This document shows, one piece after another, positions 9,995 through 59,613 of a DNA stretch of 64,000 nucleotides. Position numbers and translations under genes: made by a program. Within the stretch, counting starts at the first letter, position 1. The number at the start of each line of letters is the position of its first letter. The notes under the pieces were generated by a model. That model saw nothing but the letters and a program-made list of their open reading frames with translations. It did no database searches and had not been told where the DNA came from. The stretch lies in the IMG/VR virus record IMGVR_UViG_3300037725_000018, positions 159,358 through 223,357 of that record, one strand, 5' to 3'.

Positions 9995-10000
9995 TGAGCC

Positions 10001-10186
10001 GTGGTTATCCTAATAGAAAGCAAAAAAGAGGAAAAAGAGCTTAATAACTTAGTGAGGAGTTCTGGTTTTGAACTTGACTTTCTTGAAAGACTTCCTGCCT
10101 TTTGGCACGTGCCGGAACTTTTGCTGCGTGACCTGAAAACGGTAGGTTTTAAAACAGAACAAAGGCGATTAAAATTTAATCGGTAG
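10001..10186 (+). CDS. Family A small protein (GTG start)
   Basis: 61 aa, MVILIESKKE. Confidence 0.8.
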   Translation: MVILIESKKEEKELNNLVRSSGFELDFLERLPAFWHVPELLLRDLKTVGFKTEQRRLKFNR

Positions 10187-10201
10187 TAACCGAATCAGCT
10201 A

Positions 10202-10396
10202 ATGATTGTCATTTTGAAAAACATACAGGAGGGCAGGCATTTAGAAAATGTTAAGGGGGTGGGTCCCAAAAGAGAAGAGGTCGTATACGAATATAGATAT
10301 GGGCCACGCCTGCGGGTTCAAATCCTAAGAGATTGCAGAAAAGGGGCAAAAGAAGGTGGGGAGCGGCTGAAAATTCCGGGCCGAATACGTCAGTAA
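10202..10396 (+). CDS. Family A small protein, paralog of 10413..10613
   Basis: 64 aa, MIVILKN; shares R...L.D.R.G.K..G.RLK.P. Confidence 0.8.
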   Translation: MIVILKNIQEGRHLENVKGVGPKREEVVYEYRYGPRLRVQILRDCRKGAKEGGERLKIPGRIRQ

Positions 10397-10412
10397 AAAC
10401 AGATATGTAAAT

Positions 10413-10613
10413 ATGATCGTCATTGCAAATAACTTAAATGAAGACCGTTGGATAGTGGGACACCCGAATATCGAAAGAAAAGAAATTGCCTACGTTTACG
10501 TGTGGACACGGGAAGAGAGGACCCGTCTTTTAAAAGACTTCAGGCGGGGGATAAAAAAGAGTGGCAAAAGGCTAAAAATGCCCGATCACATGGAAACAAG
10601 TAAAAAATGGTAA
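10413..10613 (+). CDS. Family A small protein
   Basis: 66 aa, MIVIANN. Confidence 0.8.
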   Translation: MIVIANNLNEDRWIVGHPNIERKEIAYVYVWTREERTRLLKDFRRGIKKSGKRLKMPDHMETSKKW

Positions 10614-10624
10614 AAACGCTTCCC

Positions 10625-10816
10625 ATGATATTCATCTTCAAAGAGTTTGAGTACTCAAACAACATTGACTTCTTTAAAGAGACGATTATTTCAAGCGACG
10701 GGTTGGTAAAGTCCGGTTCTGTCGTTGCCGATTCTCCCGGAACAATCCCTCTAACAAAGAGTTCATACAAAAAAATCAAAGAATACGTCAAAACCCGGTT
10801 GTCAAACAAACAGTGA
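10625..10816 (+). CDS. Family A small protein
   Basis: 63 aa, MIFIFKE...KKIKEYVKTRL. Confidence 0.75.
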   Translation: MIFIFKEFEYSNNIDFFKETIISSDGLVKSGSVVADSPGTIPLTKSSYKKIKEYVKTRLSNKQ

Positions 10817-10998
10817 TCATCATCGAAGAAAACATGTTTGAACAGAAGCTAACGTTTCCCATTCGGCTTGCCCCCGAAGAACGAGTAAGCCGAAAAGACG
10901 CTTTCTTAAACGGGTGTATCTCTGCGCTTACTTTGCATAACCCAAGTGAAGGCTGGACGAAAAGGCGGCTTTGTTTAATCACCGAACGTTACCAATAA
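10813..10998 (+). CDS. Family A small protein (GTG start)
   Basis: 61 aa, MIIIEEN; GTGA overlap. Confidence 0.7.
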   Translation: MIIIEENMFEQKLTFPIRLAPEERVSRKDAFLNGCISALTLHNPSEGWTKRRLCLITERYQ

Positions 10999-11017
10999 CG
11001 AAACCCTTTGAAAAGAT

Positions 11018-11215
11018 ATGGTCGTTTGCTTTGAAAACGAAAATGAACTTGTTTCCAATACAACGATTCTTTTCGGGCGCAAGTCCGTAAACGGAATCAT
11101 TCTTGACCCTGAAGAAATTTGTATAGTCAAAAGACCGGATAATATCCATGCCCAAGTTGAAAAAAGCTTTTCGACCTGTCGCCTCACCTGTTTTGTAAAA
11201 AGTTCACGCACATAA
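11018..11215 (+). CDS. Family A small protein (VNG subfamily)
   Basis: 65 aa, MVVCFENENE...SVNG. Confidence 0.8.
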   Translation: MVVCFENENELVSNTTILFGRKSVNGIILDPEEICIVKRPDNIHAQVEKSFSTCRLTCFVKSSRT

Positions 11216-11226
11216 AAACCGGACTC

Positions 11227-11427
11227 ATGGTTGTCTATTTTGAAAAAAGAACGGAGTTTCTAAACCATTCACAATTCACAAATCGATTTCGAACAACAAT
11301 AACCGTTAACGGGCAGGTTCTTGTCAATTGCGAATATATCGTCTCGCCCAATAAAAAAGCGCCCCTTCAAATAAAAGAAAAGGACGTTCCTTTGTATCCG
11401 GGAACGCGCCTTGTTTTCGTTTTTTAA
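11227..11427 (+). CDS. Family A small protein (VNG subfamily)
   Basis: 66 aa, MVVYFEKRTE...TVNG. Confidence 0.8.
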   Translation: MVVYFEKRTEFLNHSQFTNRFRTTITVNGQVLVNCEYIVSPNKKAPLQIKEKDVPLYPGTRLVFVF

Positions 11428-11509
11428 ACGCTTGCCCAAAGCTTTGCAGAAGGCGCAAGACGGGTTTTCGGCTTTCGGTCTTTAAGGTACCCTTTACATA
11501 CAGAGAAAA

Positions 11510-30700: not shown

Positions 30701-32179
30701 TTCGCCAAATATAGCCATTGGAACTTCGTTTGAATAATCAAGATTGAGACCATTACCGAACGCAAACTTTGAACCGTATGCGTCAGATTCTGTAAACGTT
30801 TCGGTATTCATCTCATTTCCGGTACCGAACACATAAATATCGCTAGTGGAACCAGCTTGATTTTCCCCTATAGCGTTTATTTCATTAAATCTACCAAAAA
30901 CGAAAACTCGGTCATTGCCCGTACGGAACCCGCCCGGTCGATAACGAAGAACGCCTTGATTAAAATCAAATTGACTAAGATCAGAGTTGCTTAATGGCTC
31001 ACTATTAAAACTTACAGTCCAAACATTTGTTGATGAATTGAAACTAGAATTTCCAGCTTCAACATAAGAAGACCCATTTACGCTTTGGTTATCAAACTCA
31101 AAAAGACTAAAACTTGGGTTTCCAAAAAGTTCGGGACCGTCTTCTATTTTTAATTCATTTGTGGTGCTGTTGTATTCAATTGCAAGGTCTGAAACATCTC
31201 TGTAATTGACGAAATTATCAATTCCAAAGTTTCCGGAATAATCGGAATCTACAAGTGATCCGGAACTACTAAACATCAAAGAGGTTAAAGTAGAATCAAT
31301 CAAGCCTTGTTGCCCAGCCTTAATTGAATTTCTAATCCCCCTAGCCGCCGCAGATTGGGCACCTATAAAGAGATTTGATGATGAATCATTCAAATTTCCA
31401 AACTCTACCTTGTCCGGGAGAAGTCCAAGATATGCATTATACTTTCCCCCATTAGCGTTAAAGTTTCCGCTTGCTAATCCTACTATTAAACTTTTGTCAA
31501 TGTTTTCTATTGTATTTGAGCTTGTAGAGGCAACATTGACAAAAGAGTCAGTTATGTTATTTAAGGACACGCCACCGTCTGCGGCATTAACAAAACTTCT
31601 TTCTGTATTACTTATTGAACCACTACGAACATTTGCAAAAGTATATTCTACGTCTTCACCAAATGTACCACCATCCCCTGTAAGAAAGGAAGCAATTTTA
31701 TCTGTGCCAAATCCAGCCCCGGAATACGTCATATCGTTTCCGGTTGCAAAAGTAAAACCAATGTTGGAAACTTCGGAACCTTGACCCGTGACAATCGAGT
31801 TTTCTACAACGCCGGGAATTGTAATGTTAACCCCGGTAATAAAACTTTCTTTTGCGGGAATTGCAAAATCAGCAATATCTACCCCAAATCCAGTAACAAA
31901 GTTAGATTCTCCAAATTCTGTTGACGTTGGGTTTCCAAGAACAACTTGTCCGGGTTCTCCAACCGAAAGGTCCCCAATGTTAGCGTCAAACGTTAGGTCC
32001 GGGCTTGAACCAAACGTACCTTGATCGTTGAATTGAATTTCGGTGTCGTTTCCTGCTACGCTAGCAAGGATATCGGCGTCAACGTCGAAAACGTAGTTTC
32101 CCGTTGAACTGTTGAAGGTAACGGAAACGTCACCGTCAGCAAAAAGTAGATCGTCTTCTGTTATGTGAAGTCCTGCCAT
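27797..32179 (-). CDS. Modular tail fibre/adhesin with Hep/Hag YadA head repeats
   Basis: 1460 aa; tandem S.AMG..TEA.G repeats; C-terminal KSPDGTRFRVKVKNDG. Confidence 0.85.
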   Translation of the reverse strand: MAGLHITEDDLLFADGDVSVTFNSSTGNYVFDVDADILASVAGNDTEIQFNDQGTFGSSPDLTFDANIGDLSVGEPGQVVLGNPTSTEFGESNFVTGFGVDIADFAIPAKESFITGVNITIPGVVENSIVTGQGSEVSNIGFTFATGNDMTYSGAGFGTDKIASFLTGDGGTFGEDVEYTFANVRSGSISNTERSFVNAADGGVSLNNITDSFVNVASTSSNTIENIDKSLIVGLASGNFNANGGKYNAYLGLLPDKVEFGNLNDSSSNLFIGAQSAAARGIRNSIKAGQQGLIDSTLTSLMFSSSGSLVDSDYSGNFGIDNFVNYRDVSDLAIEYNSTTNELKIEDGPELFGNPSFSLFEFDNQSVNGSSYVEAGNSSFNSSTNVWTVSFNSEPLSNSDLSQFDFNQGVLRYRPGGFRTGNDRVFVFGRFNEINAIGENQAGSTSDIYVFGTGNEMNTETFTESDAYGSKFAFGNGLNLDYSNEVPMAIFGEFNEAGTDTATDNDKLFVIGNGNNDGNRSDGFVFRKNGDIEITEPSNASNTDQVLVRNPTTGKIEKVSGSQFSGGGNGSSTIQAGLGLSSTFNASTGETIFDVVASGNDNEVQFNDNGSLGASPDLAFNGSSLISSGFTVQPGGTFDMGFVPDIPTTVNVQHSNSGNFFLTWFVLAETPGGLLTARDGDFRQSLPTPDSSNPVEVNWQENSSAEKYYVIVEQFDSGTFSLDYRLIAEITDTTTTSVVDTGQGTLLSNFPGLDQSDIPQQNETFGKIFFTTRQISSSAETGGLLMNADVSGEVARTPGDRARYEGSGAFTFGQRDSAQSIGNGSFAAGGTGLIATGEASIALGENTEATSTAAVALGSGSRATDIGAFAAGQGAQATDSGAVALGLGTQAVGTNCVAEGNSTVAGGGAAAHAEGFRTEALGTSSHSEGSDTLARGRSSHAGGDNTVAWPYASRVVGFFNEDYLGGLTQNPPPAQQGIEDFQSLSERIFAVGVGENPSTSPGDGNYIDGRGRVDGLYVTVREGTHIRHGLSLDSYNASLGDYETELRIGPEISEGTDASQVLVRNPNTNELEYVDGSTLGSGGETIVAGTGLESVFNPSTGDTTFNVDPIISDTESDMILRDSSTGELITLDGSSAFAKYEGNGAFTLGSRAGAVGANSVAMGENTEASGGFSTAIGAGTEANGFYSIAMGISTIANANQSVAMGSNTETSGIGSTAMGIYTEAKGYSSTAMGNYTISRTYAGIAQGVYNEDYLGTGNEPDGIEDITPQDRLLAVGVGDNPSQQGFGSEFNDGLGRADGLYVTYRDGTYVREGLTVERFQVNDSTGEYIKNVDGVTQVETVLSIGREIAEGTNASQVLVRNPSTKELEYIDASNFSGGGGSTNVVGGIGIDSSYNASTDAFTVELSDVVAKAVDFGGSVRVTSGEMEVTTPGLGQILKSPDGTRFRVKVKNDGTIVSEEL

Positions 32180-45326: not shown

Positions 45327-45499
45327 AGCCTGCGTGTTGAAATTTGAAATTCAATAATCATTCTAGTTTTTCCGAAAATTGCGTGTTCTTTTAAACAGAA
45401 GATGTTTGCTTTTGTTCCTTTTAGAATATAAATCTTGTCTCCGTCTCTCAAAAAGTCGTCTTCAATCAATCTTTGATCTGTTCTCTTTACAACAGTCAT
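45320..45499 (-). CDS. Small hypothetical protein coupled to thyA stop
   Basis: 59 aa from MTVVKRTD; ATGA overlap. Confidence 0.5.
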   Translation of the reverse strand: MTVVKRTDQRLIEDDFLRDGDKIYILKGTKANIFCLKEHAIFGKTRMIIEFQISTRRLC

Positions 45500-46410
45500 A
45501 CCGCAATCGGGGCCTTGATCCAACTTCCGCTTTCGTACCCTTTTAGATTAAAATCTTCAAACTCAAAGTCGTCAATCGACGTTTGACCTTCGGAAACTTC
45601 AAGAGAGGGGAGGGAATAGCTTTTTCGGTTCATCATTTCAACGGCAGGCTCGAAGTGATTTTTATACAAATGCGCGTCCCCAATTGTATAGACAAGTTCG
45701 CCGGGAACGTGTCCGGTAAGCCGCGAAACCATGATTGTAAGAAGAGAATAGGAGGAAATGTTAAATGGAAGGCCCAAAAACGTGTCGTTGGACCGAATGT
45801 AAATCTGGCAGTCCAGCGCCCTTTTTGGAACGTCGTATGTTTGAAGAACAGACTCGTTAACGGGTTTGCTGCACGGGCCACCTAAAACCTCTTCTTCAAG
45901 TGCCGTTACCCGCTCTTGAAAAGAAAGCGTTCGGCTGTAGAATTGAAACATGATGTGGCAAGGAAATAGGTTCATGTCTTCGAGCTTCCCTGCGTTCCAA
46001 GCGGAAACGACGTGTCTTCTACTGTCCGGGTTGGAGTTGATATTGTCAATAACGTTTTGAAGCTGGTCAATGCGGTTTCCGTCCTTGTCTTCCCACTTTC
46101 TCCATTGAACGCCGTACAACGGGCCAACATTTCCATCTTCGTCTGCCCACTCGTCCCAAATTCCAACTTCGTTTTCAACAAGGTACTTGATGGATTCTTC
46201 CCCCCGAAGAAACCATATAAGCTCGTGAACTAAGCTTCGAAACTTTGTTTCTTTAACTGTAACAATTGGAAAGTTGTCTGTTGAAACCGGGAACCTCATT
46301 TGGTGGCCGAAAACCGAACGGGTTCCTGTTCCTGTTCGGTCTTCTTTGTCTGTTCCCGTTTGGATAATTTTTTGAATTAGGTCTGTATACTGCTTATCAA
46401 CAATGTTCAT
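45496..46410 (-). CDS. thyA: Thymidylate synthase
   Basis: DRTGTGT, YGVQWR, RRHVVSAWN, FPCH, YIRSNDTFLGLPFNI (Asn, dUMP type), GDAHLY. Confidence 0.95.
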   Translation of the reverse strand: MNIVDKQYTDLIQKIIQTGTDKEDRTGTGTRSVFGHQMRFPVSTDNFPIVTVKETKFRSLVHELIWFLRGEESIKYLVENEVGIWDEWADEDGNVGPLYGVQWRKWEDKDGNRIDQLQNVIDNINSNPDSRRHVVSAWNAGKLEDMNLFPCHIMFQFYSRTLSFQERVTALEEEVLGGPCSKPVNESVLQTYDVPKRALDCQIYIRSNDTFLGLPFNISSYSLLTIMVSRLTGHVPGELVYTIGDAHLYKNHFEPAVEMMNRKSYSLPSLEVSEGQTSIDDFEFEDFNLKGYESGSWIKAPIAV

Positions 46411-48835: not shown

Positions 48836-49624
48836 CTACTTGCCGATTTGCCTTTTGATTTCTTCACGGACCACCTTCCGAAGCATTTGTTCTTCAACGG
48901 TTTCCCACTCGCCCCCAAGTTCTTCGTACCTTTGAACAGCCCAACCATTAGCGTAAGCGGAATTTCCGGTAATTGTTACTGTTGACCCTTGACGCATAAC
49001 CCACGTTCCGTGTTCAGTCTGTGGGCACCAAACATCTTCTCTTCCGTCGTCTTCAATGTGCATGTTTTGTAAACCTCGGTGGCGGCGCTCTACGTCAAAA
49101 CTTGATAATTCTTCAAGGGCTTCTCCTTCAACACTTTCCGAAAGCTTCGCAGATGTTAAAAGGTTGTAGCTCGTTGGAAGCTCAGACGTTTCAATGAGCC
49201 TTCGGTCTTCAAACTTGTTTTTTCGAAAGGCAACCCACTTGTGCCCCGGAGTGCAGCGAACATCAAAACTTACCCTGTCTTTTGACATGCGCTTTATCGG
49301 AGCATCTTCGAATCTATGTTTATCTTCAACTTTGCTCCATGAAAGCACATTTTCATCTATATCATAAGCCAAAATTTCATCGCCAATTTCAATTCGGTCA
49401 TGGGCTTTCCAACCTTCGCGAGTCAAGGCTTGACTGTCAAGGGGGACGCAAGGGTAAACGTCAAATCCATCCCCGTCGTTTGGGGCCTCGACGGTTACTT
49501 CCTCCCCGTCCACAGTTCGGGACACGGAGTTTTTTTCGCCCTTGGTTACGGCAAGCACGTCTTGCCAGAGGTCTTCATCTTTTGGCCTGTTATCTGTATC
49601 TTCTGTTAAACGTCTTCTTTTCAT
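48836..49624 (-). CDS. DUF5872-like protein interrupted by a mini-intein
   Basis: Exteins join to FDVYP|SAYANGWAVQRYEELGGEW. Confidence 0.8.
   Translation of the reverse strand: MKRRRLTEDTDNRPKDEDLWQDVLAVTKGEKNSVSRTVDGEEVTVEAPNDGDGFDVYPCVPLDSQALTREGWKAHDRIEIGDEILAYDIDENVLSWSKVEDKHRFEDAPIKRMSKDRVSFDVRCTPGHKWVAFRKNKFEDRRLIETSELPTSYNLLTSAKLSESVEGEALEELSSFDVERRHRGLQNMHIEDDGREDVWCPQTEHGTWVMRQGSTVTITGNSAYANGWAVQRYEELGGEWETVEEQMLRKVVREEIKRQIGK
48962..49450 (-). mobile_element. Mini-intein (Hint domain, no homing endonuclease), 163 aa
   Basis: Starts CVPLDSQALTREGW; block B CTPGHKW; block F DVWCPQT.HGTWV; ends ITGN before Ser +1. Confidence 0.88.
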
Positions 49625-50267: not shown

Positions 50268-50603
50268 CTACTGCCGTGTGTAGTTTATAAATTCATCAAA
50301 TCTTTCGGCGTTAAACGCCTTGTCGTCAACAAATACGTCAAAAGCGGGTTTGCCCATTTTTAACTCGTCGTATTTACACCCCCACCTTTGAAGTTGGCGT
50401 TCTGTAAGGGGCCTCCAGTTTTTCCCGGTCTTTGTTCCTCTTGCGGTCCAATAAACAACGGTATGACCGTCTTCGTAGATTTGGTTGATCTTTTTGATGT
50501 TTTCCTCGATTGGAACCGCGCTTTCGTATGAATAGTCTTCAGGGCCTTCTGTTTGGCCTCTACCTTCACAAATTACGTTATCAATGTCTACATATACGTC
50601 CAT
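50268..50603 (-). CDS. HAD-family (capsule-biosynthesis-type) phosphatase
   Basis: VDIDNVIC, YWTARG, MGKPAFDVFVDDKA motifs. Confidence 0.85.
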   Translation of the reverse strand: MDVYVDIDNVICEGRGQTEGPEDYSYESAVPIEENIKKINQIYEDGHTVVYWTARGTKTGKNWRPLTERQLQRWGCKYDELKMGKPAFDVFVDDKAFNAERFDEFINYTRQ

Positions 50604-50605
50604 AT

Positions 50606-51256
50606 CTAAAATCCGTTTAAACGCTTTCTCATGCTTTCTACAGAACCATCATGTCCGAACATCGTTTTTAGCTTCTGCACATACATACGAATATGTTCGT
50701 CCGTTTGTTCCGAGCACCACCAATCGATGTGCTGGTTTAAATCCAGTGTACGCAACCTTTCGATAAGCTTTTTTGCCCCGGACGGGCGAATCACGTAAGC
50801 CACGAAACCTACGTTTGGCTTCTTTGAATAACTTGATGGACTAGAGTACGCAGGCTTTATTTTCTTAGGGTCGTCTTCAAGCAAATCGTGGTTTGGATTC
50901 GGTCTTCGGGCAAACAGGTTGTAAAAATCCCCGTCTGGAAGCCGGGTTAAAATGCTTTCAATCTTGTCTTCAAGCCCTTTAACAAGCGGAACCGCATCGT
51001 CTTCTAAGACCAAAACTGGTACTTCCATACTTTGAACATGCATCCAAAGAGAAAGGTGGGCAATCGCCGCCCCTGCTCTACCTTTCTTTGAATCTTCATA
51101 ATTGGGATTTTTGACTTTCGACAGCGCCGTTTGCACCCGAACGTCTTCGGGGTTTTCAACCACGTCTACGGGTTCCCACTGCAAAAGATCAAACGGAAAC
51201 TTTTTTTGTTGAAGCCTGAAATCTTTATCACTCGCAATACAAAATGTTTTGAACAT
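50606..51256 (-). CDS. Glycosyltransferase family 25-like
   Basis: GAAIAHLSLW...VLVLEDDA...AYVIRPSGAKKLI...HIDW. Confidence 0.82.
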   Translation of the reverse strand: MFKTFCIASDKDFRLQQKKFPFDLLQWEPVDVVENPEDVRVQTALSKVKNPNYEDSKKGRAGAAIAHLSLWMHVQSMEVPVLVLEDDAVPLVKGLEDKIESILTRLPDGDFYNLFARRPNPNHDLLEDDPKKIKPAYSSPSSYSKKPNVGFVAYVIRPSGAKKLIERLRTLDLNQHIDWWCSEQTDEHIRMYVQKLKTMFGHDGSVESMRKRLNGF

Positions 51257-51259
51257 TCT

Positions 51260-51496
51260 TTAATACTGGTTTTTATGATGCTCGTTGACGGTGGGGTCTT
51301 CAAAACCAAGAGATTTCAAAGCTTTCTTCATTCGATCCGGGTCATTCAAGTCTTCGGTTCGAATCTAATCGGCATAGCCGAGCTTTTCAACACGCTCGTA
51401 ATACATGTCCCAATACCTACTAATCGCTTCAAGTTTTGAAAGATCCGTTGAAAAGTTCGGAAAGCATCGGGTGTGAAGTGATAACCGATTAGTCAT
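51260..51496 (-). pseudogene. Gene remnant with in-frame TAG, possibly a sulfotransferase-like C-terminal fragment
   Basis: MTNRL..CFPNF..EAISRYWDMYYERVEKLGYAD*IRTEDLND..LKSLGF; TAG at 51365-51367. Confidence 0.5.
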
Positions 51497-52276
51497 TTAT
51501 TGAAACATGTCCAATGGAATATTAAAGTAGTTGTCCACAACTTGACCGTCTCCGGGAGAGGGCTTCCAATTTTTGATGTTTCGGACCTTTCCAACAAGAT
51601 TCGAGCGGTCTAGTCTTCTTCTTGACGTGTTTTTATACTTCCAGAGAAGGTTTTCTCGAACGTTCTTCATGTGATGCATATGAACATCTTCAGGATGAAA
51701 AAGATGTCCTACGTTGTCTTCGGTATTTTTAATTTTTCTAGTAGGGTCCACCTTACAAAAGAAATCGTTTGCTATTTTGGTATTTTGATTAATTTCGCAA
51801 ATGAATGGAACATGAAAACGCCCACCTTCAGAGTACCCTTCCTTTTGATAAATGGGAAGATTCCAGTAGTTTTTGATTTTACAGGCGGTAAGAGGCAGCG
51901 TCCGGTTTTTTACTTGCCTCTTTGCCCATTCAAACTCGCGGGTCCTGTAAAATTCGTCTACATCCATAGACACAAAATGCGTACAGCCGTTTTCTAGGCA
52001 GTCTTCAATTCCGGCCATTCGTTTCTTTTTTTCATGACCCTTGGCTATGTCCACAGTTCCGGTGTCTTTTGGGTTCATCTTAATCAACTTATCAACAAAC
52101 CCCTCTTTTCTTAGAGTTTTCAACCGTTTTTTATCTACTTCTCGGATGCCTTGCCCATAGTAAGATTCGGTTTGATATACAACGTTAATATAATCTACGT
52201 GGTTTTGGACAGAAAGAATCGAATACTTTAAAAGCTCAATTCCATCAAATGCAGAATAAGAAAGTGCAAGTTTCAT
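51497..52276 (-). CDS. GT-A fold glycosyltransferase
   Basis: SILSVQNHVDYINVVY; HFVSMDVDEFY DxD motif. Confidence 0.75.
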   Translation of the reverse strand: MKLALSYSAFDGIELLKYSILSVQNHVDYINVVYQTESYYGQGIREVDKKRLKTLRKEGFVDKLIKMNPKDTGTVDIAKGHEKKKRMAGIEDCLENGCTHFVSMDVDEFYRTREFEWAKRQVKNRTLPLTACKIKNYWNLPIYQKEGYSEGGRFHVPFICEINQNTKIANDFFCKVDPTRKIKNTEDNVGHLFHPEDVHMHHMKNVRENLLWKYKNTSRRRLDRSNLVGKVRNIKNWKPSPGDGQVVDNYFNIPLDMFQ

Positions 52277-52277
52277 G

Positions 52278-52901
52278 TCACAAGTGGTTTATCGTTCCTT
52301 CATCAATCCAATGCTGAATAACTTTTGCTTCGTTTTCTAGGTCATGAATCCGGTCCAATGTATTTTCGGAGGCGCTATCGTCGTAGTAGTGAACACCCGT
52401 GTCTCCAGTTTCGGTCAAGCTATCAAATCCGGTGACGTACACGTTTTGATATCTGTCGTCCATTATGCAGTGAGACACAATGATAAGACCAGATGAAAAA
52501 TCTTTTCGTTTATGCATCCCCAGATTGTTTTTTCGGTTGCACCGATAAACGTGTTTTTTTACTCTATTGTAATTGATCGTTTCAAACTGATCTCCCATTT
52601 TTCTTTTAAGCATGTGAAGACCCCTACGAAGACTGGATTTGTGAGTCCACGTCATTAAAAAGTAAACACTTCCAAACTTCTCTTTAAAGTAGTTTTGGTC
52701 GAACTTCTTTTTCATGTCTCGAAGGGTATATATATTCGTGTTAAAAGATATCGAATCTACCTTCGAGCCAACACGGTCTTCATTTTCAAAAATTCCTTTT
52801 TCAAACCCCTTAAATCGAATGACGTGATTGAAGCTGTCAATCACGTCTCCATTTTTATCATCTAATAAGGTGTCTCCGGATGCGGCAATCAAAGTCTTCA
52901 T
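52278..52901 (-). CDS. GT29-like sialyltransferase (divergent)
   Basis: Sialylmotif L-like IDSFNHVIRF...VGSK; S-like SSGL...VYVTGFD; HYY; HDLENE. Confidence 0.72.
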   Translation of the reverse strand: MKTLIAASGDTLLDDKNGDVIDSFNHVIRFKGFEKGIFENEDRVGSKVDSISFNTNIYTLRDMKKKFDQNYFKEKFGSVYFLMTWTHKSSLRRGLHMLKRKMGDQFETINYNRVKKHVYRCNRKNNLGMHKRKDFSSGLIIVSHCIMDDRYQNVYVTGFDSLTETGDTGVHYYDDSASENTLDRIHDLENEAKVIQHWIDEGTINHL

Positions 52902-52929
52902 AATCGTTTCGTCTTTGGTTTGTGCTTAA

Positions 52930-53433
52930 TCAAACCTCCTCAATTATATCTTTCCAAGCAACCTTTCCAAAAACTCTAGCAAGCCTGTACGCGGTCCACC
53001 GAAGATATTCTGAATCTTTCGGGTCTGAAACCAATACAAGGTCTGCCTGTTTTTGAGTCAAACGCCCACCCTTAATTTGCTTCCAGCTAGTTGTTTCTGC
53101 AAATCCAACAGACGGGTTCACAGAGGGTTCTTTAACTTGATAGGTAACTTCCCCTTTGTTTTTATAAATCCAGTCGTGAGCCACCACAGAACCTTCTAAA
53201 GCGTAATAGTCAAAAAGAAGTACCTTCAAAGGTTGAACGGGCCTTGGGATGCTCATTTCATATTCATAACCTTCCGGAACCGTAAGTTTTGCCTTCTGCC
53301 CATTTAAGAGGGGAAAAACGTGTGTATAGTCTTCACATAAGGTTCGTTTTTTCTTTCCGTTTGACGGGTGGCTTTTCGGGCTGTCAACTTGCCCACATTC
53401 CCAATCTGAAATCAATCTTTCTTCGATTCTCAT
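52930..53433 (-). CDS. DUF1353-like protein
   Basis: TVPEGY...SIPR...AHDWIY...QKQADL...Y...RVFG pattern. Confidence 0.7.
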   Translation of the reverse strand: MRIEERLISDWECGQVDSPKSHPSNGKKKRTLCEDYTHVFPLLNGQKAKLTVPEGYEYEMSIPRPVQPLKVLLFDYYALEGSVVAHDWIYKNKGEVTYQVKEPSVNPSVGFAETTSWKQIKGGRLTQKQADLVLVSDPKDSEYLRWTAYRLARVFGKVAWKDIIEEV

Positions 53434-53801
53434 ACTTCTTTTTTGCTAATTCGATCTTGTATAATGATTTCTCCTTCAACCGGAAAACGAGAGTTTTCTT
53501 CGGAAGGAACGTCTACTCTAAGGTCGTAAACCGATTTTCCCGGTGATATAACTTGTACGTCTTCCGGAGCAAGGTTGAACTTGACTTCTGAAGAATCTTC
53601 ATCTAAAGAAAGTCTGCCGTTTTCTATGCTACATTCAAGGAGGCTAGTTTCATCGGATCTTCTTCTTTTTATCCGGACAAAAAAGTTCCACTCGGACACG
53701 TCTTTTGGGGTTCCGTCGCTTTTAAGAAAACGGTCAATTTCTAAGTAAAGACCGTTTCCTTCGCTTACGTGATAGTTTTTCTCTTTAGGCTGTGAGTTCA
53801 T
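53430..53801 (-). CDS. BppU-N/Ig-like phage structural domain protein
   Basis: DGTPKDVSEW.F...IK...V.F.L.PED......VYDL...VEG.III pattern. Confidence 0.6.
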   Translation of the reverse strand: MNSQPKEKNYHVSEGNGLYLEIDRFLKSDGTPKDVSEWNFFVRIKRRRSDETSLLECSIENGRLSLDEDSSEVKFNLAPEDVQVISPGKSVYDLRVDVPSEENSRFPVEGEIIIQDRISKKEV

Positions 53802-54727
53802 TTTCTAAGATCCTTTCTCTTTTCTTTTTCTTCATCTAGGAGCGTTCTTGGCGAGTTCCCGGACAGACTTTTTTCTGTATTCACAAGAATTTCAATAAGC
53901 CGATACATTTCATCCGGCTCCAAAGAAGCAAACTGGTCGCTCCCCCACATATCTCTGTCTAAGGTCACGTGGCGTTCCATCCACTTCGATCCCAAGGCAA
54001 CGGCTACTGCTGCGGTTTCAAGTTCGGTTTCATGCCCGGAGTACCCAAGCTCTTTACCGTGACCCGTTCCGTACATCTGTTGAAGTGTTCTCTTTAGGTG
54101 TCGGATGTATTGAAGTTGAAGATTTTCTGCTTTTGTCGGGTAGCTTGAAACCGAATGCATAACAACGTCCGGGTCGCAGTTCCAGATGCTTTCTTGAATT
54201 TCCCGCTCAGTTGACATTCCCGTTGAGACAATGAGAAAGTCAAACTTTTCTCTTGCGTATTCGGTAAGCTTTTTGTTTGTAAGATGTGCAGATGGAATTT
54301 TGCCTATGTCCGTGTATTGGGCCATAAAGTCAACACTTTCGGTGTCCCATACGCTAGAGAAAATGGAAACATCCAAGTCCCGGACATACCGAAAAAGTTC
54401 TTCAAACTCTTCCTTGCCAAACTCGATATACTCTTTGTACTTAATGTACGGGATAGGGTCCTCTTCAAATGGGGTTTGGCGAAGCTGGCTTTTTTTCCAT
54501 TCGGGGACGCAAACTTCCGGTGTTCTTTTTTGAAACTTCACAAAATCAAACCCACACGTTTCAGACACATCAATTAACTTTTTCGCGGTGTCTACGTCTC
54601 CGTTGTGGTTGATTCCGATTTCGCCAACCGAAGTTACGTTTTTCGGCGTAACTTGACGTTTATCTGTTGATTTTAAAAAAGAGTCGGTTTGGTTTTTTAC
54701 GTCGTCATATGTGTAAAGTGTGTTCAC
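53798..54727 (-). CDS. neuB: N-acetylneuraminate/nonulosonate synthase (short form, no SAF domain)
   Basis: GEIGINHNGD, VKFQKR, KIPSA, IVSTGMS, MHSVSSYP, GYSGHE, ERHVTLDR.MWGSDQ.ASLEP. Confidence 0.93.
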   Translation of the reverse strand: MNTLYTYDDVKNQTDSFLKSTDKRQVTPKNVTSVGEIGINHNGDVDTAKKLIDVSETCGFDFVKFQKRTPEVCVPEWKKSQLRQTPFEEDPIPYIKYKEYIEFGKEEFEELFRYVRDLDVSIFSSVWDTESVDFMAQYTDIGKIPSAHLTNKKLTEYAREKFDFLIVSTGMSTEREIQESIWNCDPDVVMHSVSSYPTKAENLQLQYIRHLKRTLQQMYGTGHGKELGYSGHETELETAAVAVALGSKWMERHVTLDRDMWGSDQFASLEPDEMYRLIEILVNTEKSLSGNSPRTLLDEEKEKRKDLRK

Positions 54728-54777
54728 GTTACTTTTAATAATATCTTGGTAGTTTGTTCTTCAAAACCTGTGTAACA

Positions 54778-55434
54778 CTAGTATTTGATTTGAATTTTAT
54801 CTTGTTGTTGCATTCGTTTCATAAGTTTCTTCTCTGCGCTGTAGTCGTGTGGCCCGGAAATGTCTTGATCCAACTCTTCAAAATAATGTCTTTTTTCCAC
54901 GTCTGACTTCATGTGAAAACCAAAACCATAAAGATCAATCTCTACGTCACTTCCAGAACACTCGCTTAACAGAATCGTCATTAAAAGTCCAAGACTCGCT
55001 TGCCCGTGAGTGTTATACTTTCGAAGCTTACGTTTTGACAGAGAATAAATTCTATTGTTTAAAAACAAAAGCTCGTTTGCCACATCTTCATAAAATTCAA
55101 CTGCCCGTTTTCTGCGTTTTGATCCAGAGGGTTTGAATATAAGACGTTCTCCGTCCGTGATTCGGGCCATATCCTCTTTAGTTGTTTCAGAGGCGTTAAT
55201 TCCGTGTCCTAAATGCATTACGGAGTTTAAACACCGAAACGTCGTCTTCGACCCAACGTGCTTTTCGTACCCCTCTACCTCTGCACCGTTGAACCTTAAA
55301 ACCCAATCATGGTCGTCAATTTCGCTTCCAAGTGTGTTTTCTAACACAACGCCGGAGTTCCCAACAATCGCCACAGATGAAGGGATCGTGTAGTTGAACT
55401 TAGATTGAAAATACGTTGAAATTCCTTTTGGCAT
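54778..55434 (-). CDS. GT29 sialyltransferase
   Basis: Sialylmotif L AIVGNSG..IDDHDWVLRFN....Y..HVGSKTTFR; S-motif; HYF; HDYSAE. Confidence 0.88.
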   Translation of the reverse strand: MPKGISTYFQSKFNYTIPSSVAIVGNSGVVLENTLGSEIDDHDWVLRFNGAEVEGYEKHVGSKTTFRCLNSVMHLGHGINASETTKEDMARITDGERLIFKPSGSKRRKRAVEFYEDVANELLFLNNRIYSLSKRKLRKYNTHGQASLGLLMTILLSECSGSDVEIDLYGFGFHMKSDVEKRHYFEELDQDISGPHDYSAEKKLMKRMQQQDKIQIKY

Positions 55435-55440
55435 TTTGAT

Positions 55441-56082
55441 TTATTTCACAATATCAAATTGATTAGACTCGCAAAACCTGTTCACAACTTCTTCTTCTTT
55501 ATCCCACGTATGAGAACCGTCGTGGTGGTCGCTCCATTGTTCCCAATAATGGCGGTTTTCAACTTTTTCTTGGTGAAACCCAAATCCGTAAAGCGTAACA
55601 TGCTCGCAAAGGCAAGAAAACGTAAGACAAGCAAACATTCCGGTTGAAGGGTGTCTATTTAACTTGTGTTTTACATCTTTTGAAATATATTCTTTAAATT
55701 CTTCAGTAAGCTCGTAAATCGTATTTGAACTATGCGTTAAATTTCGAGCAACGTTTAAAGACCTTTCGTTAACGGGGACGAATATCAAATTTTGATTTCT
55801 AAGCGTTTTAAGCCAGTTTGAAGGCGTAGACGTGTAGTTAAGCGTTTTTCCCTGCTGAAGAAGCCCGTTGACAAGCCGAAACGTCGTTTTTGATCCAACG
55901 TCTTCTTTATGTCCTTTCACTTCTGCGGCGTTCATCCGAACAACACATTCATGGCTGTCAATTTCTTCTCCATTTCCAGAACCGGAAAGGATTCCGCTAT
56001 TTCCCACCACCGCACAATCAGTGAAGCTAACTGTTTTATCTTTGAATATGCGTTGGTGGGGTTTGGGTTGCCGCTTAATCAT
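55441..56082 (-). CDS. GT29 sialyltransferase
   Basis: CAVVGNSGIL..IDSHECVVRMN...DVGSKTTFR; PSTGMF..C..VTLYGF; HYW; HTWDKE. Confidence 0.92.
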   Translation of the reverse strand: MIKRQPKPHQRIFKDKTVSFTDCAVVGNSGILSGSGNGEEIDSHECVVRMNAAEVKGHKEDVGSKTTFRLVNGLLQQGKTLNYTSTPSNWLKTLRNQNLIFVPVNERSLNVARNLTHSSNTIYELTEEFKEYISKDVKHKLNRHPSTGMFACLTFSCLCEHVTLYGFGFHQEKVENRHYWEQWSDHHDGSHTWDKEEEVVNRFCESNQFDIVK

Positions 56083-56779
56083 TCACTTTTTCTTGATATT
56101 GCCTCCAATCTTCTTTTGTGTCTACGTCAATAACTCTGTTGTTTAGTCGGTAATATATAGTATCTTTGTTATAGAGGTTTTTATTTAGAGAATCAAGTTC
56201 GTCCACCCGAAATACAGATACAAAATGGCTGTACTCGTAGACGTTTTCTCCGGAATGGATTTCAAAGTCAAGGTCTTTGAGCTTCCCCTTTGCCTCTTGC
56301 CTACGAAACTTCCCCCTTTCAGATGGAAAAACGTGACGCGCCTTCATCGTATCTGAATCAAGACGCATCATAAGATGTGAATACGTGTCTTCGGTCGGGG
56401 GCTGCAGGCAAAGAAGGGAAGAAGCTTGGTTCTTTTTGTAAAAGCCAAGGATACTTCGAACGTCTCGCTTGTATTCACGCTCCGGGTAGGTAGGGTACAA
56501 AAGAACAATGTCGTCGTTGTCGTAGAAATCAAACTTTGAAAAGACGTGTTCGATTACAGGCTTTATACTTGTTTCATCCTGTGCAAGTTCTTTGGGGCGT
56601 TCGACAAGCTTCATCCGGCTTTCACGAACGAACTCTTGAATTTTCGGGTCGTCTGTTGTCACAATGATTCGGCTTAAAACTCTACGTGGAAATTTTTCTT
56701 TGATGATCGGGACAAGCTTCCGATTTTTATTCGGAAAACCTTTTGATCCCTCTCTTGCAGGTACAATATAGTGGAACAT
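56075..56779 (-). CDS. neuA: CMP-N-acetylneuraminate (acylneuraminate) cytidylyltransferase
   Basis: IVPAREGSKGFPNKN, VTTDD, RPKELAQD, LYPTYP.R, IDVDT..DW. Confidence 0.9.
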   Translation of the reverse strand: MFHYIVPAREGSKGFPNKNRKLVPIIKEKFPRRVLSRIIVTTDDPKIQEFVRESRMKLVERPKELAQDETSIKPVIEHVFSKFDFYDNDDIVLLYPTYPEREYKRDVRSILGFYKKNQASSLLCLQPPTEDTYSHLMMRLDSDTMKARHVFPSERGKFRRQEAKGKLKDLDFEIHSGENVYEYSHFVSVFRVDELDSLNKNLYNKDTIYYRLNNRVIDVDTKEDWRQYQEKVND

Positions 56780-58640: not shown

Positions 58641-59120
58641 TTACTGTTCCAACTTGCCCCCAACCATTCTCTTTTTTACCTCTCTGTGCAAATCTTTGAA
58701 AGTGTGCCCTCTCTTTTCATACACCTTTTCTCTTTCAAATATCTTGTCTATTTTCTTGCTCAGATCACAACTTCTTTTCAACCGCACAACACTTCCATCT
58801 TTAAGTTTAACATAATACGTATCGCTAATAAAGAGTGGAAAAATGTCAAAAGACTCCGGATAAGCTACCCTTGCCACATACTTTACATTGTCGGTGCGAT
58901 AAAAATGGATCATTTTTTCCTCGGCACATACAGCGTAGTAACCATCTAAAGAAACGTAACCCGGATCTCTTGACAGCCCATAATTTTTTAGGTCTCTTTC
59001 AAGAGAATCGCATTTAGAATATGCCTTACCGTAAACTTGTAAGACAGAAACTTTTTCAAAAACGGGAATAAGAATTGCCAACAACAAAAAGTTGCCAACG
59101 AAAATTAAAAGCAGATCCAT
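58641..59120 (-). CDS. Membrane-anchored protein, paralog of 59131..59613
   Basis: N-terminal TM helix; shared LQ..G...SK, AE..I.FY..D, FP..F...Y....KD. Confidence 0.7.
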   Translation of the reverse strand: MDLLLIFVGNFLLLAILIPVFEKVSVLQVYGKAYSKCDSLERDLKNYGLSRDPGYVSLDGYYAVCAEEKMIHFYRTDNVKYVARVAYPESFDIFPLFISDTYYVKLKDGSVVRLKRSCDLSKKIDKIFEREKVYEKRGHTFKDLHREVKKRMVGGKLEQ

Positions 59121-59130
59121 TGAAATTTAC

Positions 59131-59613
59131 TTAAACGTTATCTTTTTTCCTTCGCTCGATTTCCCGCACGATTTCTGAAAACGAGAGTTCCGTATCAAGT
59201 TCACCATTTTTCGGCCTATGTGTTCCGTTAATAACCGATGAAAAATACCTGTGTAGTTCGCTAAACGGAAAAACAACTGCGCTTTTTTTGCCAAAGTCTT
59301 TTGTTAAGATCACGTAAGAGTGTGGAAAAAACATAAGTGGTGGAAAAAAGCCCCGGCGCATAGCTACACAAAGAGCCTCTTTATCCTCCCCGTAGAAGTA
59401 TATTGCATCTTCTGCAACAATATAGTCCGGGACTCCCTTTTTGCCAGATACCTCTAAGGGGCCTTTGCCATTCTCAATGTATCCCACGACCTCCGGGCGC
59501 TCATCCTTACTAAAAACAAGTCCCCCAAGAATTTGTGCCTGCAAAACCAACTCTATGAAATACAAGGCAACCACGCCTCCAACGGCAATTGAAAAAAGAA
59601 AAATCCAAATCAT
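59131..59613 (-). CDS. Membrane-anchored protein, paralog of 58641..59120
   Basis: N-terminal TM helix and shared motifs. Confidence 0.7.
   Translation of the reverse strand: MIWIFLFSIAVGGVVALYFIELVLQAQILGGLVFSKDERPEVVGYIENGKGPLEVSGKKGVPDYIVAEDAIYFYGEDKEALCVAMRRGFFPPLMFFPHSYVILTKDFGKKSAVVFPFSELHRYFSSVINGTHRPKNGELDTELSFSEIVREIERRKKDNV

What the first reader, a model, noticed from the sequence alone, without database searches (positions are those of the whole stretch)
50268..56779. Phage-encoded nonulosonic (sialic) acid synthesis-activation-transfer cluster, possibly KDN
Seen: NeuB-like synthase without a SAF domain, NeuA cytidylyltransferase, a stand-alone HAD phosphatase, three GT29 sialyltransferases, GT25 and a GT-A enzyme. 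No NeuC epimerase is in the window. Established: synthase + HAD phosphatase + CMP-transferase without an epimerase is the logic of the Bacteroides KDN-9-phosphate pathway from mannose-6-P. Inference: the phage builds a sialylated/KDNylated glycan on its virion (a DUF1353 and an Ig-like structural gene are embedded in the cluster) or remodels the host surface to block superinfection. A negatively charged coat could also aid solubility in brine.
Basis: partly seen in the sequence, partly recalled or inferred. Interest (0 to 1): 0.8.

Follow-up and report, generated by a model that had tools for sequence, protein, structure and literature searches.

The report
Phage-encoded sialic-acid-type sugar pathway
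A large tidal-flat phage carries a complete, animal-style set of genes to make, activate and attach a sialic-acid-type sugar (probably Kdn), using a sialyltransferase family (GT29) that I found no paper reporting in phages.

Summary
On the minus strand of 50268-56779 lie a CMP-sugar synthetase (NeuA), three GT29 sialyltransferases, a SAF-less NeuB synthase, a GT-A glycosyltransferase, a GT25 enzyme and a 111-aa HAD phosphatase. All are soluble and under purifying selection (dN/dS 0.04-0.15). No Epimerase_2 (NeuC) is in the window or in a 484-kb relative with the same cassette.

New findings:
- The small HAD accompanies this NeuB type in 68 of 79 viral loci, often directly adjacent. In the closest bacterial homologues (Streptomyces, Chloroflexota) a HAD is fused to NeuA. 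This supports a 9-phosphate route.
- Streptomyces walls contain Kdn, so Kdn is the most economical product, but it is unproven.
- The NeuA-GT29-NeuB cassette recurs in many uncultured phages. Some add fucosyltransferase and sulfotransferases.
- The window keeps only a truncated sulfotransferase (51266-51469). A co-occurring sister strain has it intact.

Not supported:
- "Brine": the source is tidal-flat metagenomes and the cluster proteins are not especially acidic.
- DUF1353: the match is below threshold.
- "Ig-like structural gene": only a lead.

The acceptor (virion or host surface) is unresolved. This is a new variant of a known kind. Interest 0.72.

The parts
56075..56779 (-). NeuA-like CMP-nonulosonate synthetase (234 aa)
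   Evidence: Pfam CTP_transf_3 32.2 bits (cut-off 22.6). TIGR03584 PseF aligns full length, E 8e-13. PDB 6ifd CMP-NeuNAc synthetase E 3e-9, 1eyr E 8e-6. dN/dS 0.066 against L003.
55441..56082 (-). GT29 sialyltransferase a (213 aa). Has all four sialylmotifs and both cysteines of the eukaryotic L-S disulfide pair. No membrane anchor.
   Evidence: Pfam PF00777 E 4e-38. PDB pig ST3Gal-I 2wml E 4e-18, with the L, S, III (HYWE) and VS (HxxxxE) motifs aligned. Motif table. No hydrophobic segment. dN/dS 0.03-0.045.
54778..55434 (-). GT29 sialyltransferase b (218 aa). Motifs III and VS intact, no cysteine pair.
   Evidence: Pfam PF00777 E 4e-29. Alignment A1. Falls in a separate deep lineage in the tree. 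dN/dS 0.061.
53798..54727 (-). SAF-less NeuB-family nonulosonate (probably 9-phosphate) synthase (309 aa, GTG start)
   Evidence: Pfam NeuB E 2e-53. Below the NCBIfam NeuB and PseI equivalog cut-offs. Best PDB match is 6ncs, a 290-aa NeuB. Catalytic columns invariant in A3. K1 NeuB aligns only over its residues 3-280 of 346. dN/dS 0.057.
53430..53801 (-). 123-aa phage protein of unknown role. Leads point to LtfC/BppU_N-like small structural domains.
   Evidence: phrog_1084 E 2e-10. Atlas structure TM 0.7-0.78 to LtfC/BppU_N-like viral clusters. Conserved next to NeuB in L003, L009 and L097. dN/dS 0.083.
52930..53433 (-). 167-aa ORF, uncertain. DUF1353-like below threshold. Variable between strains.
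   Evidence: Pfam DUF1353 17.2 bits, below the 22.5 cut-off. phrog_1158 E 2e-9. Atlas leads under 0.9 to HNH-type nucleases. No homologue in L009. One strain replaces 52772-53110 with other sequence.
52278..52901 (-). GT29 sialyltransferase c (207 aa). Divergent L motif, motifs III and VS intact.
   Evidence: Pfam PF00777 29.8 bits (cut-off 23). Orthologue in L009 at 39% identity. Motif table. dN/dS 0.080.
51497..52276 (-). GT-A fold glycosyltransferase of a phage family without a Pfam model (259 aa)
   Evidence: 176 homologues, none with a Pfam domain. Invariant D105-x-D107-E108. AF2 pLDDT 95.5, pTM 0.92. Foldseek against PDB: SunS/ThuS, SpsA, TarS, COLGALT1, E 1e-7 to 1e-5. Atlas leads to GT2/GT17/CgtA.
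51266..51469 (-). Remnant (last third) of a sulfotransferase gene. About 421 bp are deleted relative to the sister strain.
   Evidence: The 203-aa Sulfotransfer_4-like protein of L097 (10831-11442) matches here over its residues 135-202, 76% identity, E 5e-33. blastn shows L097 10811-11231 has no counterpart in the window. One run has 441 extra letters at 51470/51487.
50606..51256 (-). GT25 family glycosyltransferase (216 aa)
   Evidence: Pfam PF01755 28.7 bits (cut-off 24). phrog_854 glucosyltransferase E 7e-7. GT25 also follows GT29 in L002, L094 and L097. dN/dS 0.15.
50268..50603 (-). 111-aa cap-less HAD phosphatase, proposed nonulosonate-9-phosphate phosphatase
   Evidence: Motifs DIDNV, WTARG, GKP and DD. 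PDB 9iqw E 2e-9. phrog_1238 E 3e-25. TIGR01689 E 6e-5. Co-occurs with NeuB in 68 of 79 viral loci. dN/dS 0.098.

Best explanation
This is a phage-encoded, fully cytoplasmic pathway that makes, activates and transfers a sialic-acid-type nine-carbon sugar. It follows the eukaryote/Bacteroides logic rather than the usual bacterial one.

Proposed steps:
1. The SAF-less NeuB condenses PEP with a host 6-phospho-hexose. Mannose-6-phosphate is the most likely, which would give Kdn-9-phosphate.
2. The 111-aa HAD phosphatase removes the 9-phosphate.
3. NeuA makes the CMP-sugar.
4. Three soluble, anchor-less GT29 sialyltransferases from three deep lineages cap a glycan.
5. The inner sugars of that glycan are laid down by the GT-A enzyme and the GT25 enzyme.

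Sister strains and related phages add sulfate, and some add fucose.

Shown here: the gene identities, intact catalytic motifs, purifying selection, solubility, the HAD-NeuB linkage and the absence of an epimerase.

Inferred: the phosphorylated intermediate (about 0.7), Kdn as the sugar (about 0.5) and the acceptor. My best guess for the acceptor is phage structural proteins, giving a glycosylated virion (about 0.45). Host envelope precursors come next (about 0.4).
For: - Family assignments and motifs.
- All ten genes under purifying selection against an 87% sister strain, dN/dS 0.04-0.15, dS 0.2-0.95.
- No transmembrane segment in any cluster protein.
- HAD within 10 kb of this NeuB type in 68 of 79 IMG/VR loci, within 50 bp in 31. 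NeuA in 65 of 79. GT29 in 17 of 79, always with HAD and NeuA.
- The nearest cellular NeuBs (40-46% identity; Chloroflexota, Streptomyces) lie directly behind NeuA-HAD fusions.
- Streptomyces walls carry Kdn teichulosonic acid (PMC11481543).
- Kdn-9-P synthases use Man-6-P and need a phosphatase (PMC6200933).
- No Epimerase_2 in the window, in the GT29 phage loci L001-L009 and L094-L098, or in the 80 bacterial loci. None in the 484-kb LR756508.1 with two different queries.
- The NeuA-GT29-GT29-NeuB-GT29 order recurs on independent phage contigs.
- The phage is found in at least five tidal-flat samples.
Against: - No biochemical, transcript or proteome data exist.
- Substrate specificity of NeuB cannot be read from the sequence.
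- The HAD is of the EcbF/BcbF-like kind (TIGR01689, PDB 9iqw). From my own knowledge, the known Kdn-9-P phosphatase is of the YrbI kind and NANP is another HAD type again.
- 10 of 79 viral loci with this NeuB and HAD also carry an Epimerase_2, so the module is not always epimerase-free.
- The other 159 kb of this phage's 223-kb contig was not examined.
- The link between the Streptomyces locus and Kdn is by organism, not by a tested gene.
- Nothing in the window identifies the acceptor.
Confidence: 0.6

Rival explanations
1. Same pathway, but the sugar is Neu5Ac (or another 5-N-acyl sialic acid). It would be made from host ManNAc-6-phosphate through Neu5Ac-9-phosphate, exactly as in animals.
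For: The synthase/HAD/CMP-synthetase/GT29 set is also the animal NANS-NANP-CMAS-ST set (PMC5811610). The best PDB matches of NeuA are CMP-Neu5Ac synthetases. 10 of 79 related viral loci carry an Epimerase_2 beside NeuB and the HAD.
Against: No epimerase or sugar kinase was seen in this window or in the GT29-bearing relatives. From general knowledge, ManNAc-6-P is not a common bacterial metabolite, whereas Man-6-P is. The closest cellular NeuB homologues include Streptomyces, an organism known for Kdn polymers (PMC11481543).
Confidence: 0.2
2. The target is the host cell surface. The soluble enzymes would modify LPS/LOS cores, capsule units or surface proteins on the cytoplasmic side during infection. 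This would mask receptors against superinfection and stop progeny being lost on debris.
For: GT25 is by its Pfam description an LPS-biosynthesis family. From general knowledge, bacterial LOS sialyltransferases act at the cytoplasmic face. The cluster sits among replication and nucleotide genes, not among the tail genes. Gene content differs between close strains, as in surface-antigen loci.
Against: The Pfam hits of the ten cluster proteins and of the called genes in nine related loci show no flippase, polymerase, ligase or initiating phosphoglycosyl transferase, and no integrase either. The GT-A enzyme's nearest folds are peptide glycosyltransferases SunS/ThuS.
Confidence: 0.4
3. The HAD is unrelated to the synthase. 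NeuB would use an unphosphorylated host sugar (ManNAc, or a 2,4-diacetamido-6-deoxyhexose giving legionaminic or pseudaminic acid).
For: NCBIfam scores NeuA best against PseF, and NeuB also matches PseI. PHROG labels the HAD family 'phosphoheptose isomerase'.
Against: The HAD is linked to NeuB in 86% of 79 viral loci and is fused to NeuA in bacteria. No dehydratase, aminotransferase or N-acetyltransferase genes of the Leg/Pse routes were seen in the cluster or its relatives. NeuB scores far below the PseI cut-off (134 against 340 bits).
Confidence: 0.1
4. The glycosyltransferases hypermodify the phage DNA with glycans, as described for phage GT-A/GT-B enzymes acting on 5-hydroxymethylpyrimidines.
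For: A thymidylate-synthase-family gene, DHFR and MazG lie within 5-12 kb of the cluster. Phage GT-A enzymes near ThyS-like genes glycosylate DNA (bioRxiv 10.1101/2023.12.21.572611). TarS and TarP appear among the fold matches of the GT-A enzyme.
Against: The ThyA passes the curated equivalog cut-offs for a true thymidylate synthase, and DHFR is present, as expected for dTMP synthesis. No TET/5mYOX or C5-methyltransferase was seen. That preprint does not mention sialic or nonulosonic acids.
Confidence: 0.04

Closest known systems
Kdn pathway of Bacteroides thetaiotaomicron and Prymnesium parvum (Kdn-9-P synthase, Kdn-9-P phosphatase, CMP-Kdn synthetase)
   Same: NeuB-family synthase plus HAD phosphatase plus CMP-synthetase, with no UDP-GlcNAc 2-epimerase (PMC6200933).
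   Different: It is encoded by a phage. The phosphatase is a tiny 111-aa EcbF/BcbF-like HAD. It is coupled to GT29 transferases. The substrate is untested.
Animal/eukaryotic sialylation pathway (NANS, NANP, CMAS, Golgi GT29 sialyltransferases)
   Same: The same four enzyme classes. All four sialylmotifs are present, and GT29a keeps the L-S cysteine pair.
   Different: The GT29 proteins are about 210 aa, with no membrane anchor or stem, so they are presumably cytoplasmic. There is no GNE epimerase/kinase and no transporter.
Bacterial GT29 sialyltransferase-like proteins of marine proteobacteria (Petit et al. 2018, PMC5811610)
   Same: Short prokaryote-type GT29 with sialylmotifs, from marine settings.
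   Different: That paper reports 23 bacterial sequences without the conserved cysteines and does not mention phages. Here GT29 sits on phage contigs in multi-copy cassettes, and a minority keep both cysteines (7 of 96 short forms).
Streptomyces/Chloroflexota loci with SAF-less NeuB behind a NeuA-HAD fusion (Streptomyces walls carry Kdn teichulosonic acid)
   Same: Closest cellular NeuB homologues (40-46% identity). Same synthase-phosphatase-cytidylyltransferase logic, with no epimerase nearby (PMC11481543).
   Different: In the phage the HAD is a separate small protein of another subfamily. The transferases are GT29, whereas the Streptomyces locus L033 has a DUF6716 glycosyltransferase upstream.
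Virus-encoded glycosylation machineries (chlorovirus and mimivirus capsid or fibril glycans; mycobacteriophage virion glycosylation). Named from general knowledge, not tested here.
   Same: Soluble virus-encoded glycosyltransferases and sugar-nucleotide enzymes acting in the cytoplasm.
   Different: As far as I found, none of these uses GT29 or a Kdn/sialic acid pathway. The acceptor here is unknown.

Membership tests
CAZy GT29 / Pfam PF00777 sialyltransferases | Profile match above the curated threshold | tested here: met
   131.7, 102.3 and 29.8 bits against a cut-off of 23 for the three ORFs.
CAZy GT29 / Pfam PF00777 sialyltransferases | Sialylmotifs L, S, III (H-Y-aromatic-acidic) and VS (H-x4-E) | tested here: met
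   GT29a has all four, aligned to pig ST3Gal-I. Motif III His, VS His and VS Glu are present in a, b and c. The L motif is degenerate in c.
CAZy GT29 / Pfam PF00777 sialyltransferases | Type II membrane anchor and stem (Golgi topology) of the eukaryotic enzymes | tested here: not met
   The proteins are 207-218 aa and the highest 19-residue hydropathy is 1.3 or less. This is a feature of the eukaryotic members, not of the catalytic family.
CAZy GT29 / Pfam PF00777 sialyltransferases | Transfer from a CMP-nonulosonate donor | not testable with these tools
   Needs an enzyme assay.
NeuB family nonulosonate synthases (PF03102) | Profile match and conserved catalytic or metal-binding residues | tested here: met
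   181.7 bits. Invariant E36, N40, K64-F65-Q66-K67, S194/Y196/P197, H232-E233 and E251-R252-H253 in A3.
Neu5Ac synthase equivalog (TIGR03569) / pseudaminic acid synthase equivalog (TIGR03586) | Score above the curated equivalog cut-off | tested here: not met
   171 bits against 399.65, and 134 bits against 340.25. So it is not filed as a NeuB or PseI orthologue.
Canonical two-domain NeuB | C-terminal SAF (antifreeze-like) domain | tested here: not met
   The protein is 309 aa and Pfam finds only the NeuB domain. K1 NeuB aligns over its residues 3-280 of 346. SAF-less forms are known in environmental bacteria (PMC8208679).
Kdn-9-phosphate pathway | Synthase uses mannose-6-phosphate | not testable with these tools
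   Needs an assay with Man-6-P, ManNAc-6-P, Man and ManNAc.
Kdn-9-phosphate pathway | Dedicated phosphatase genetically linked to the synthase | tested here: met
   HAD in the cluster. It co-occurs with NeuB in 68 of 79 viral loci and is adjacent in 31. In bacterial relatives it is fused to NeuA. Its substrate is untested.
Kdn-9-phosphate pathway | No UDP-GlcNAc 2-epimerase (NeuC) in the genome | tested here: inconclusive
   None in the 64-kb window or in the 484-kb relative. The other 159 kb of this contig was not seen. 10 of 79 viral loci do have one.
HAD superfamily phosphatases | Motifs I (DxD), II (S/T), III (K) and IV (DD) | tested here: met
   DIDNV, WTARG, GKP and VDDK are conserved in six phage homologues. 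PDB 9iqw E 2e-9.
CMP-nonulosonate synthetases (PF02348) | Profile match above threshold and similarity to solved CMP-Neu5Ac synthetases | tested here: met
   32.2 bits against 22.6. 6ifd E 3e-9 over residues 5-231.
GT25 (PF01755) | Profile match above threshold | tested here: met
   28.7 bits against 24.
GT-A fold glycosyltransferases | Rossmann-like GT-A fold with a DxD motif | tested here: met
   pLDDT 95.5. 230 PDB matches at E 0.001 or better, led by GT2 enzymes. Invariant D105 and D107.
DUF1353 (PF07087) | Profile match above threshold | tested here: not met
   17.2 bits against a cut-off of 22.5.

The most novel reading that the evidence does not exclude
Tailed phages of marine and sediment bacteria are a large, overlooked reservoir of GT29 sialyltransferases. 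They carry a whole eukaryote-style glycan toolkit: sialic acid/Kdn synthesis through 9-phosphate, GT29, GT10 fucosyltransferase, GT25 and sulfotransferases. They use it to coat their virions with sialylated or Kdn-ylated glycans, in some lineages sulfated and fucosylated 'Lewis-like' ones. These phages may also have carried GT29 between bacteria and early eukaryotes.
Probability: 0.25. Interest if true: 0.9.

Novelty: new variant of a known kind. Interest (0 to 1): 0.72.

Why it matters
GT29 is the family that makes all animal sialoglycans, and its origin is debated. The only prokaryotic members described in the paper I found are 23 bacterial sequences (PMC5811610).

Here GT29 appears in multi-copy, strongly conserved cassettes on phage genomes, together with a self-sufficient donor-sugar pathway. 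My searches found no paper describing this.

If the product is confirmed, this would be:
- the first phage-made sialic-acid-type glycan;
- a source of small, soluble, anchor-less sialyltransferases, and of a minimal 111-aa phosphatase, for glycoengineering;
- a new data set for the question of where eukaryotic sialylation came from.

The strain-level gain and loss of the sulfotransferase suggests that the glycan is under diversifying pressure. That points to a role in recognition.

Tried and rejected
- **DNA-level searches.** Searches of the cluster and of the tail region against the phage collection found nothing. Only protein-level searches were informative.
- **GT29 profile on the bacterial and archaeal genome collection.** It returned nothing, because only one narrow peptide pattern was usable. 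This says little about bacterial GT29.
- **Single-sequence AlphaFold2 of the 259-aa ORF.** It failed, with pLDDT 29. With 45 homologues it succeeded.
- **tblastn with E. coli K1 NeuC.** It proved too insensitive, scoring true viral Epimerase_2 proteins only at E 1e-9 to 2e-4. I replaced it with a profile HMM on six-frame translations and a second tblastn query.
- **Promoter and terminator scan.** It was no better than shuffled sequence.
- **Brine or halophile idea.** Rejected.
- **DNA-glycosylation idea.** Judged unlikely.
- **My by-eye reading of ORF 48836-49624 as intein-containing.** It got no support from Pfam, NCBIfam, PHROGs or PDB.
- **PHROG scan of the flanking ORFs.** It gave nothing that points to an acceptor.
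- **GT29 tree.** It is midpoint-rooted and unlabelled, its support values were not examined, and it uses the 150 hits closest to a phage profile. I use it only as a lead.
- **Literature searches for phage GT29, phage sialic acid or phage Kdn.** They found nothing relevant. The library is incomplete, so this is not proof of novelty.

Full report
**What is there**

The finding spans ten back-to-back ORFs on the minus strand. From the upstream end they are:

| Coordinates | Product | Main evidence |
|---|---|---|
| 56075-56779 | NeuA-like CMP-nonulosonate synthetase | Pfam 32.2 bits; full-length PseF-model match; PDB 6ifd E 3e-9 |
| 55441-56082 | GT29a | Pfam E 4e-38 |
| 54778-55434 | GT29b | Pfam E 4e-29 |
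| 53798-54727 | NeuB-family synthase | Pfam E 2e-53 |
| 53430-53801 | 123-aa ORF | phrog_1084 |
| 52930-53433 | 167-aa ORF | sub-threshold DUF1353 |
| 52278-52901 | GT29c | Pfam 29.8 bits, above the cut-off of 23 |
| 51497-52276 | 259-aa ORF | GT-A fold |
| 50606-51256 | GT25 | Pfam 28.7 bits against 24 |
| 50268-50603 | 111-aa ORF | HAD phosphatase |

- GT29a aligns to pig ST3Gal-I (2wml, E 4e-18). Sialylmotifs L, S, III (HYWE) and VS (H-x4-E) are in register, including both cysteines of the conserved L-S pair.
- GT29b and GT29c keep the motif III His and the VS His and Glu. They lack the cysteine pair, and GT29c has a degenerate L motif.
- NeuB has no SAF domain. It is 309 aa, and E. coli K1 NeuB aligns only over its residues 3-280 of 346. 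It scores far below the NCBIfam equivalog cut-offs for Neu5Ac synthase and pseudaminic acid synthase. Its best PDB match is a 290-aa NeuB, 6ncs.
- The 111-aa ORF has the four HAD motifs, and PDB 9iqw matches it at E 2e-9.
- The 259-aa ORF belongs to a 176-member family without any Pfam domain. With 45 homologues it folds at pLDDT 95.5 into a GT-A fold. The nearest solved structures are the peptide glycosyltransferases SunS/ThuS, then SpsA, TarS and COLGALT1. It has an invariant DxD motif.
- None of the proteins has a membrane segment.

The DUF1353 label is below threshold. 'Ig-like' is only a lead, to LtfC/BppU_N-like domains.

The 240-bp 'gap' between GT25 and the GT-A gene holds the last third of a sulfotransferase gene (51266-51469, minus strand).

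- A sister strain at 87% nucleotide identity has the same ten genes plus an intact 203-aa sulfotransferase at that place. It occurs in the same JGI sample as the window and in another (L098, L097).
- The window lacks about 421 bp of that gene.
- Logan contigs of tidal-flat runs show both strains side by side. Two further local replacements were seen, one of them over the 167-aa ORF.
- Against the sister strain every gene has dN/dS 0.04-0.15 at unsaturated dS. This includes GT29c, the HAD and the two small ORFs. The genes are therefore in use.

**Where it comes from**

- The window is the last 64 kb of a 223-kb IMG/VR contig.
- It is a tailed phage. It has tail-fibre C-terminal domains, an endolysin, DHFR, ThyA, MazG, a PD-(D/E)XK exonuclease and one tRNA.
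- Its nearest cultured relatives by the exonuclease are Flavobacterium myophages (34% identity). The 484-kb uncultured phage LR756508.1 matches at 40%.
- The runs that hold it are tidal-flat metagenomes, not brines.

**Is the cassette a one-off? No**

- LR756508.1 has a SAF-less NeuB (51% identity), four Pfam-confirmed GT29 genes around it (tblastn counts five GT29-like places in the genome) and the small HAD. GDP-mannose dehydratase and an epimerase/reductase lie next door.
- Independent phage-like contigs carry NeuA-GT29-GT29-NeuB-GT29. Several add GT25, sulfotransferases and a GT10 fucosyltransferase.
- A word-indexed search of 5.8 billion proteins found only about 13 short relatives of GT29a.
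- The exhaustive profile search found 93 clusters at E below 1e-30. Among the best 150 plus the earlier hits, 96 are short (180-262 aa). Of these, 95 lack an N-terminal hydrophobic segment and nearly all have intact motif III and VS residues.
- All three that I sampled were on phage-like contigs.
- A rough tree puts GT29a, b and c in three deep lineages. The anchor-bearing (eukaryote-like) sequences form one clade among the short ones (a lead only).

**The pathway logic**

In 79 IMG/VR loci that encode this NeuB type (45-57% identity), I counted genes within 10 kb of NeuB:

| Gene within 10 kb of NeuB | Loci of 79 |
|---|---|
| Small HAD | 68 (within 50 bp in 31) |
| NeuA | 65 |
| GT29 | 17 (always with HAD and NeuA) |

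- The nearest cellular NeuBs (40-46% identity) are in Chloroflexota, Streptomyces, Myxococcota and a few others.
- In 70 of the 80 bacterial loci fetched a NeuA-like ORF lies near NeuB (in most, about 400 aa or longer and directly upstream). In the two I checked with Pfam it is a NeuA-HAD fusion.
- A synthase that always travels with a phosphatase is what a 9-phosphate route predicts. That is the route of animals, B. thetaiotaomicron and Prymnesium (PMC6200933).
- Streptomyces walls are decorated with a Kdn polymer (PMC11481543). That makes Kdn the natural guess for this NeuB clade.

**Epimerase**

- A profile HMM for Epimerase_2 found nothing in the six-frame translation of the window. It also found nothing in the GT29 phage loci L001-L009 and L094-L098, or in the 80 bacterial loci.
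- It did find one in 10 of the 79 IMG/VR loci, each time together with the HAD, and in one distant GT29 locus.
- LR756508.1 has none by two tblastn queries.
- So the core module does not need an epimerase, but some phages add one. The remaining 159 kb of this contig was not searched.

**Mechanism I commit to**

Host Man-6-P plus PEP gives Kdn-9-P (NeuB). The HAD converts this to Kdn, and NeuA makes CMP-Kdn. The three GT29 enzymes then transfer it onto a glycan started and extended by the GT-A and GT25 enzymes. All steps happen in the cytoplasm.

- The phosphorylated route: about 0.7.
- Kdn rather than Neu5Ac: about 0.5.

The acceptor is open.
- For virion proteins: all enzymes are soluble; the Pfam hits of the cluster and of related loci show no flippase, polymerase or ligase; the GT-A fold is nearest to peptide glycosyltransferases; a conserved small phage-structural-like ORF sits in the cluster.
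- For host envelope precursors: GT25 is an LPS-type family, and the cluster sits among replication and nucleotide genes.

I put virion glycosylation slightly ahead (0.45 against 0.40).

DNA glycan hypermodification is unlikely. ThyA passes the curated cut-offs for a true thymidylate synthase, and DHFR is present.

**Novelty**

- Every enzyme belongs to a known family, and SAF-less NeuBs and bacterial GT29s have been described (PMC8208679, PMC5811610).
- New here are the carrier (phages), the assembly (a self-sufficient eukaryote-style pathway with several GT29 paralogues, plus sulfation and fucosylation in relatives) and the tiny stand-alone HAD.
- My literature searches found no report of phage GT29 or phage Kdn. 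The library is incomplete.
- Verdict: a real feature, a new variant of a known kind, interest 0.72.

Noticed in passing
window 51266-51469 (minus); L097 10831-11442; L098 9619-10230: The window has a 5'-truncated sulfotransferase. A co-occurring sister strain, present in the same sample, keeps an intact 203-aa gene between the GT-A and GT25 genes. This is a presence/absence polymorphism inside the glycan cluster.
   Followed up: yes
L002 5528-20654; L094 7364-14956; L096 3620-10259: Related phage contigs combine NeuA, three or four GT29 genes and one or more sulfotransferases. L002 and L094 add GT25 and a GT10 (alpha-1,3-fucosyltransferase-type) gene. NeuB is present in L094 and L096. L002 also has GDP-mannose dehydratase/epimerase. 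This is the enzyme set expected for sulfated, fucosylated, sialylated 'Lewis-like' glycans.
   Followed up: partly
window 50780-56779 (runs X1, X5, X6, X7): Two strains differing by about 13% of nucleotides, mostly transitions, coexist in the tidal-flat samples. Local replacements occur at 51470/51487 (441 extra letters) and 52772-53110 (331 different letters).
   Followed up: partly
L001 10084-11229 (LR756508.1); window 52930-53433: In the 484-kb phage a GIY-YIG homing-endonuclease-like gene sits between NeuB and the next GT29. In the window the variable 167-aa ORF occupies a similar position downstream of NeuB and has weak HNH-nuclease-like leads. Mobile insertions may be punctuating the cassette.
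   Followed up: partly
window 48836-49624 (minus): By eye this 262-aa ORF looks intein- or Hint-like: a Cys-Val-Pro-Leu-Asp stretch begins a segment that ends in Thr-Gly-Asn-Ser. Pfam, NCBIfam, PHROGs and PDB gave no support.
   Followed up: partly
window 27797-32179 (minus): A 1460-aa fibre-like protein rich in Ser/Thr/Asn/Gly, with repeated Ala/Gly/Ser/Thr-rich motifs reminiscent of trimeric-adhesin head repeats. It coincides with a local GC peak (0.53). It is flanked by 1956-aa and 1066-aa ORFs. These are possible virion fibres and possible glycan acceptors.
   Followed up: no
window 1-11500 (plus): A block of tightly packed 55-110-aa ORFs on the plus strand with strong positive AT skew. 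No ORF here exceeds about 130 aa. It looks like an early-gene block of tiny proteins.
   Followed up: no
window 45496-46410 (minus): The thymidylate synthase passes the curated cut-offs but matches its models in two or three pieces, with an insertion of about 27 residues near positions 160-188.
   Followed up: no
window 58641-59613 (minus): Two adjacent ORFs of 159 and 160 aa each start with a strongly hydrophobic segment (hydropathy 2.8 and 2.4). These are the only membrane or secreted candidates near the cluster.
   Followed up: no
L135, L140, L150, L152, L165, L178: Several IMG/VR contigs with the same SAF-less NeuB type are labelled GVMAG (giant-virus bins). Either giant viruses share the module or phage contigs were binned with them.
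   Followed up: no
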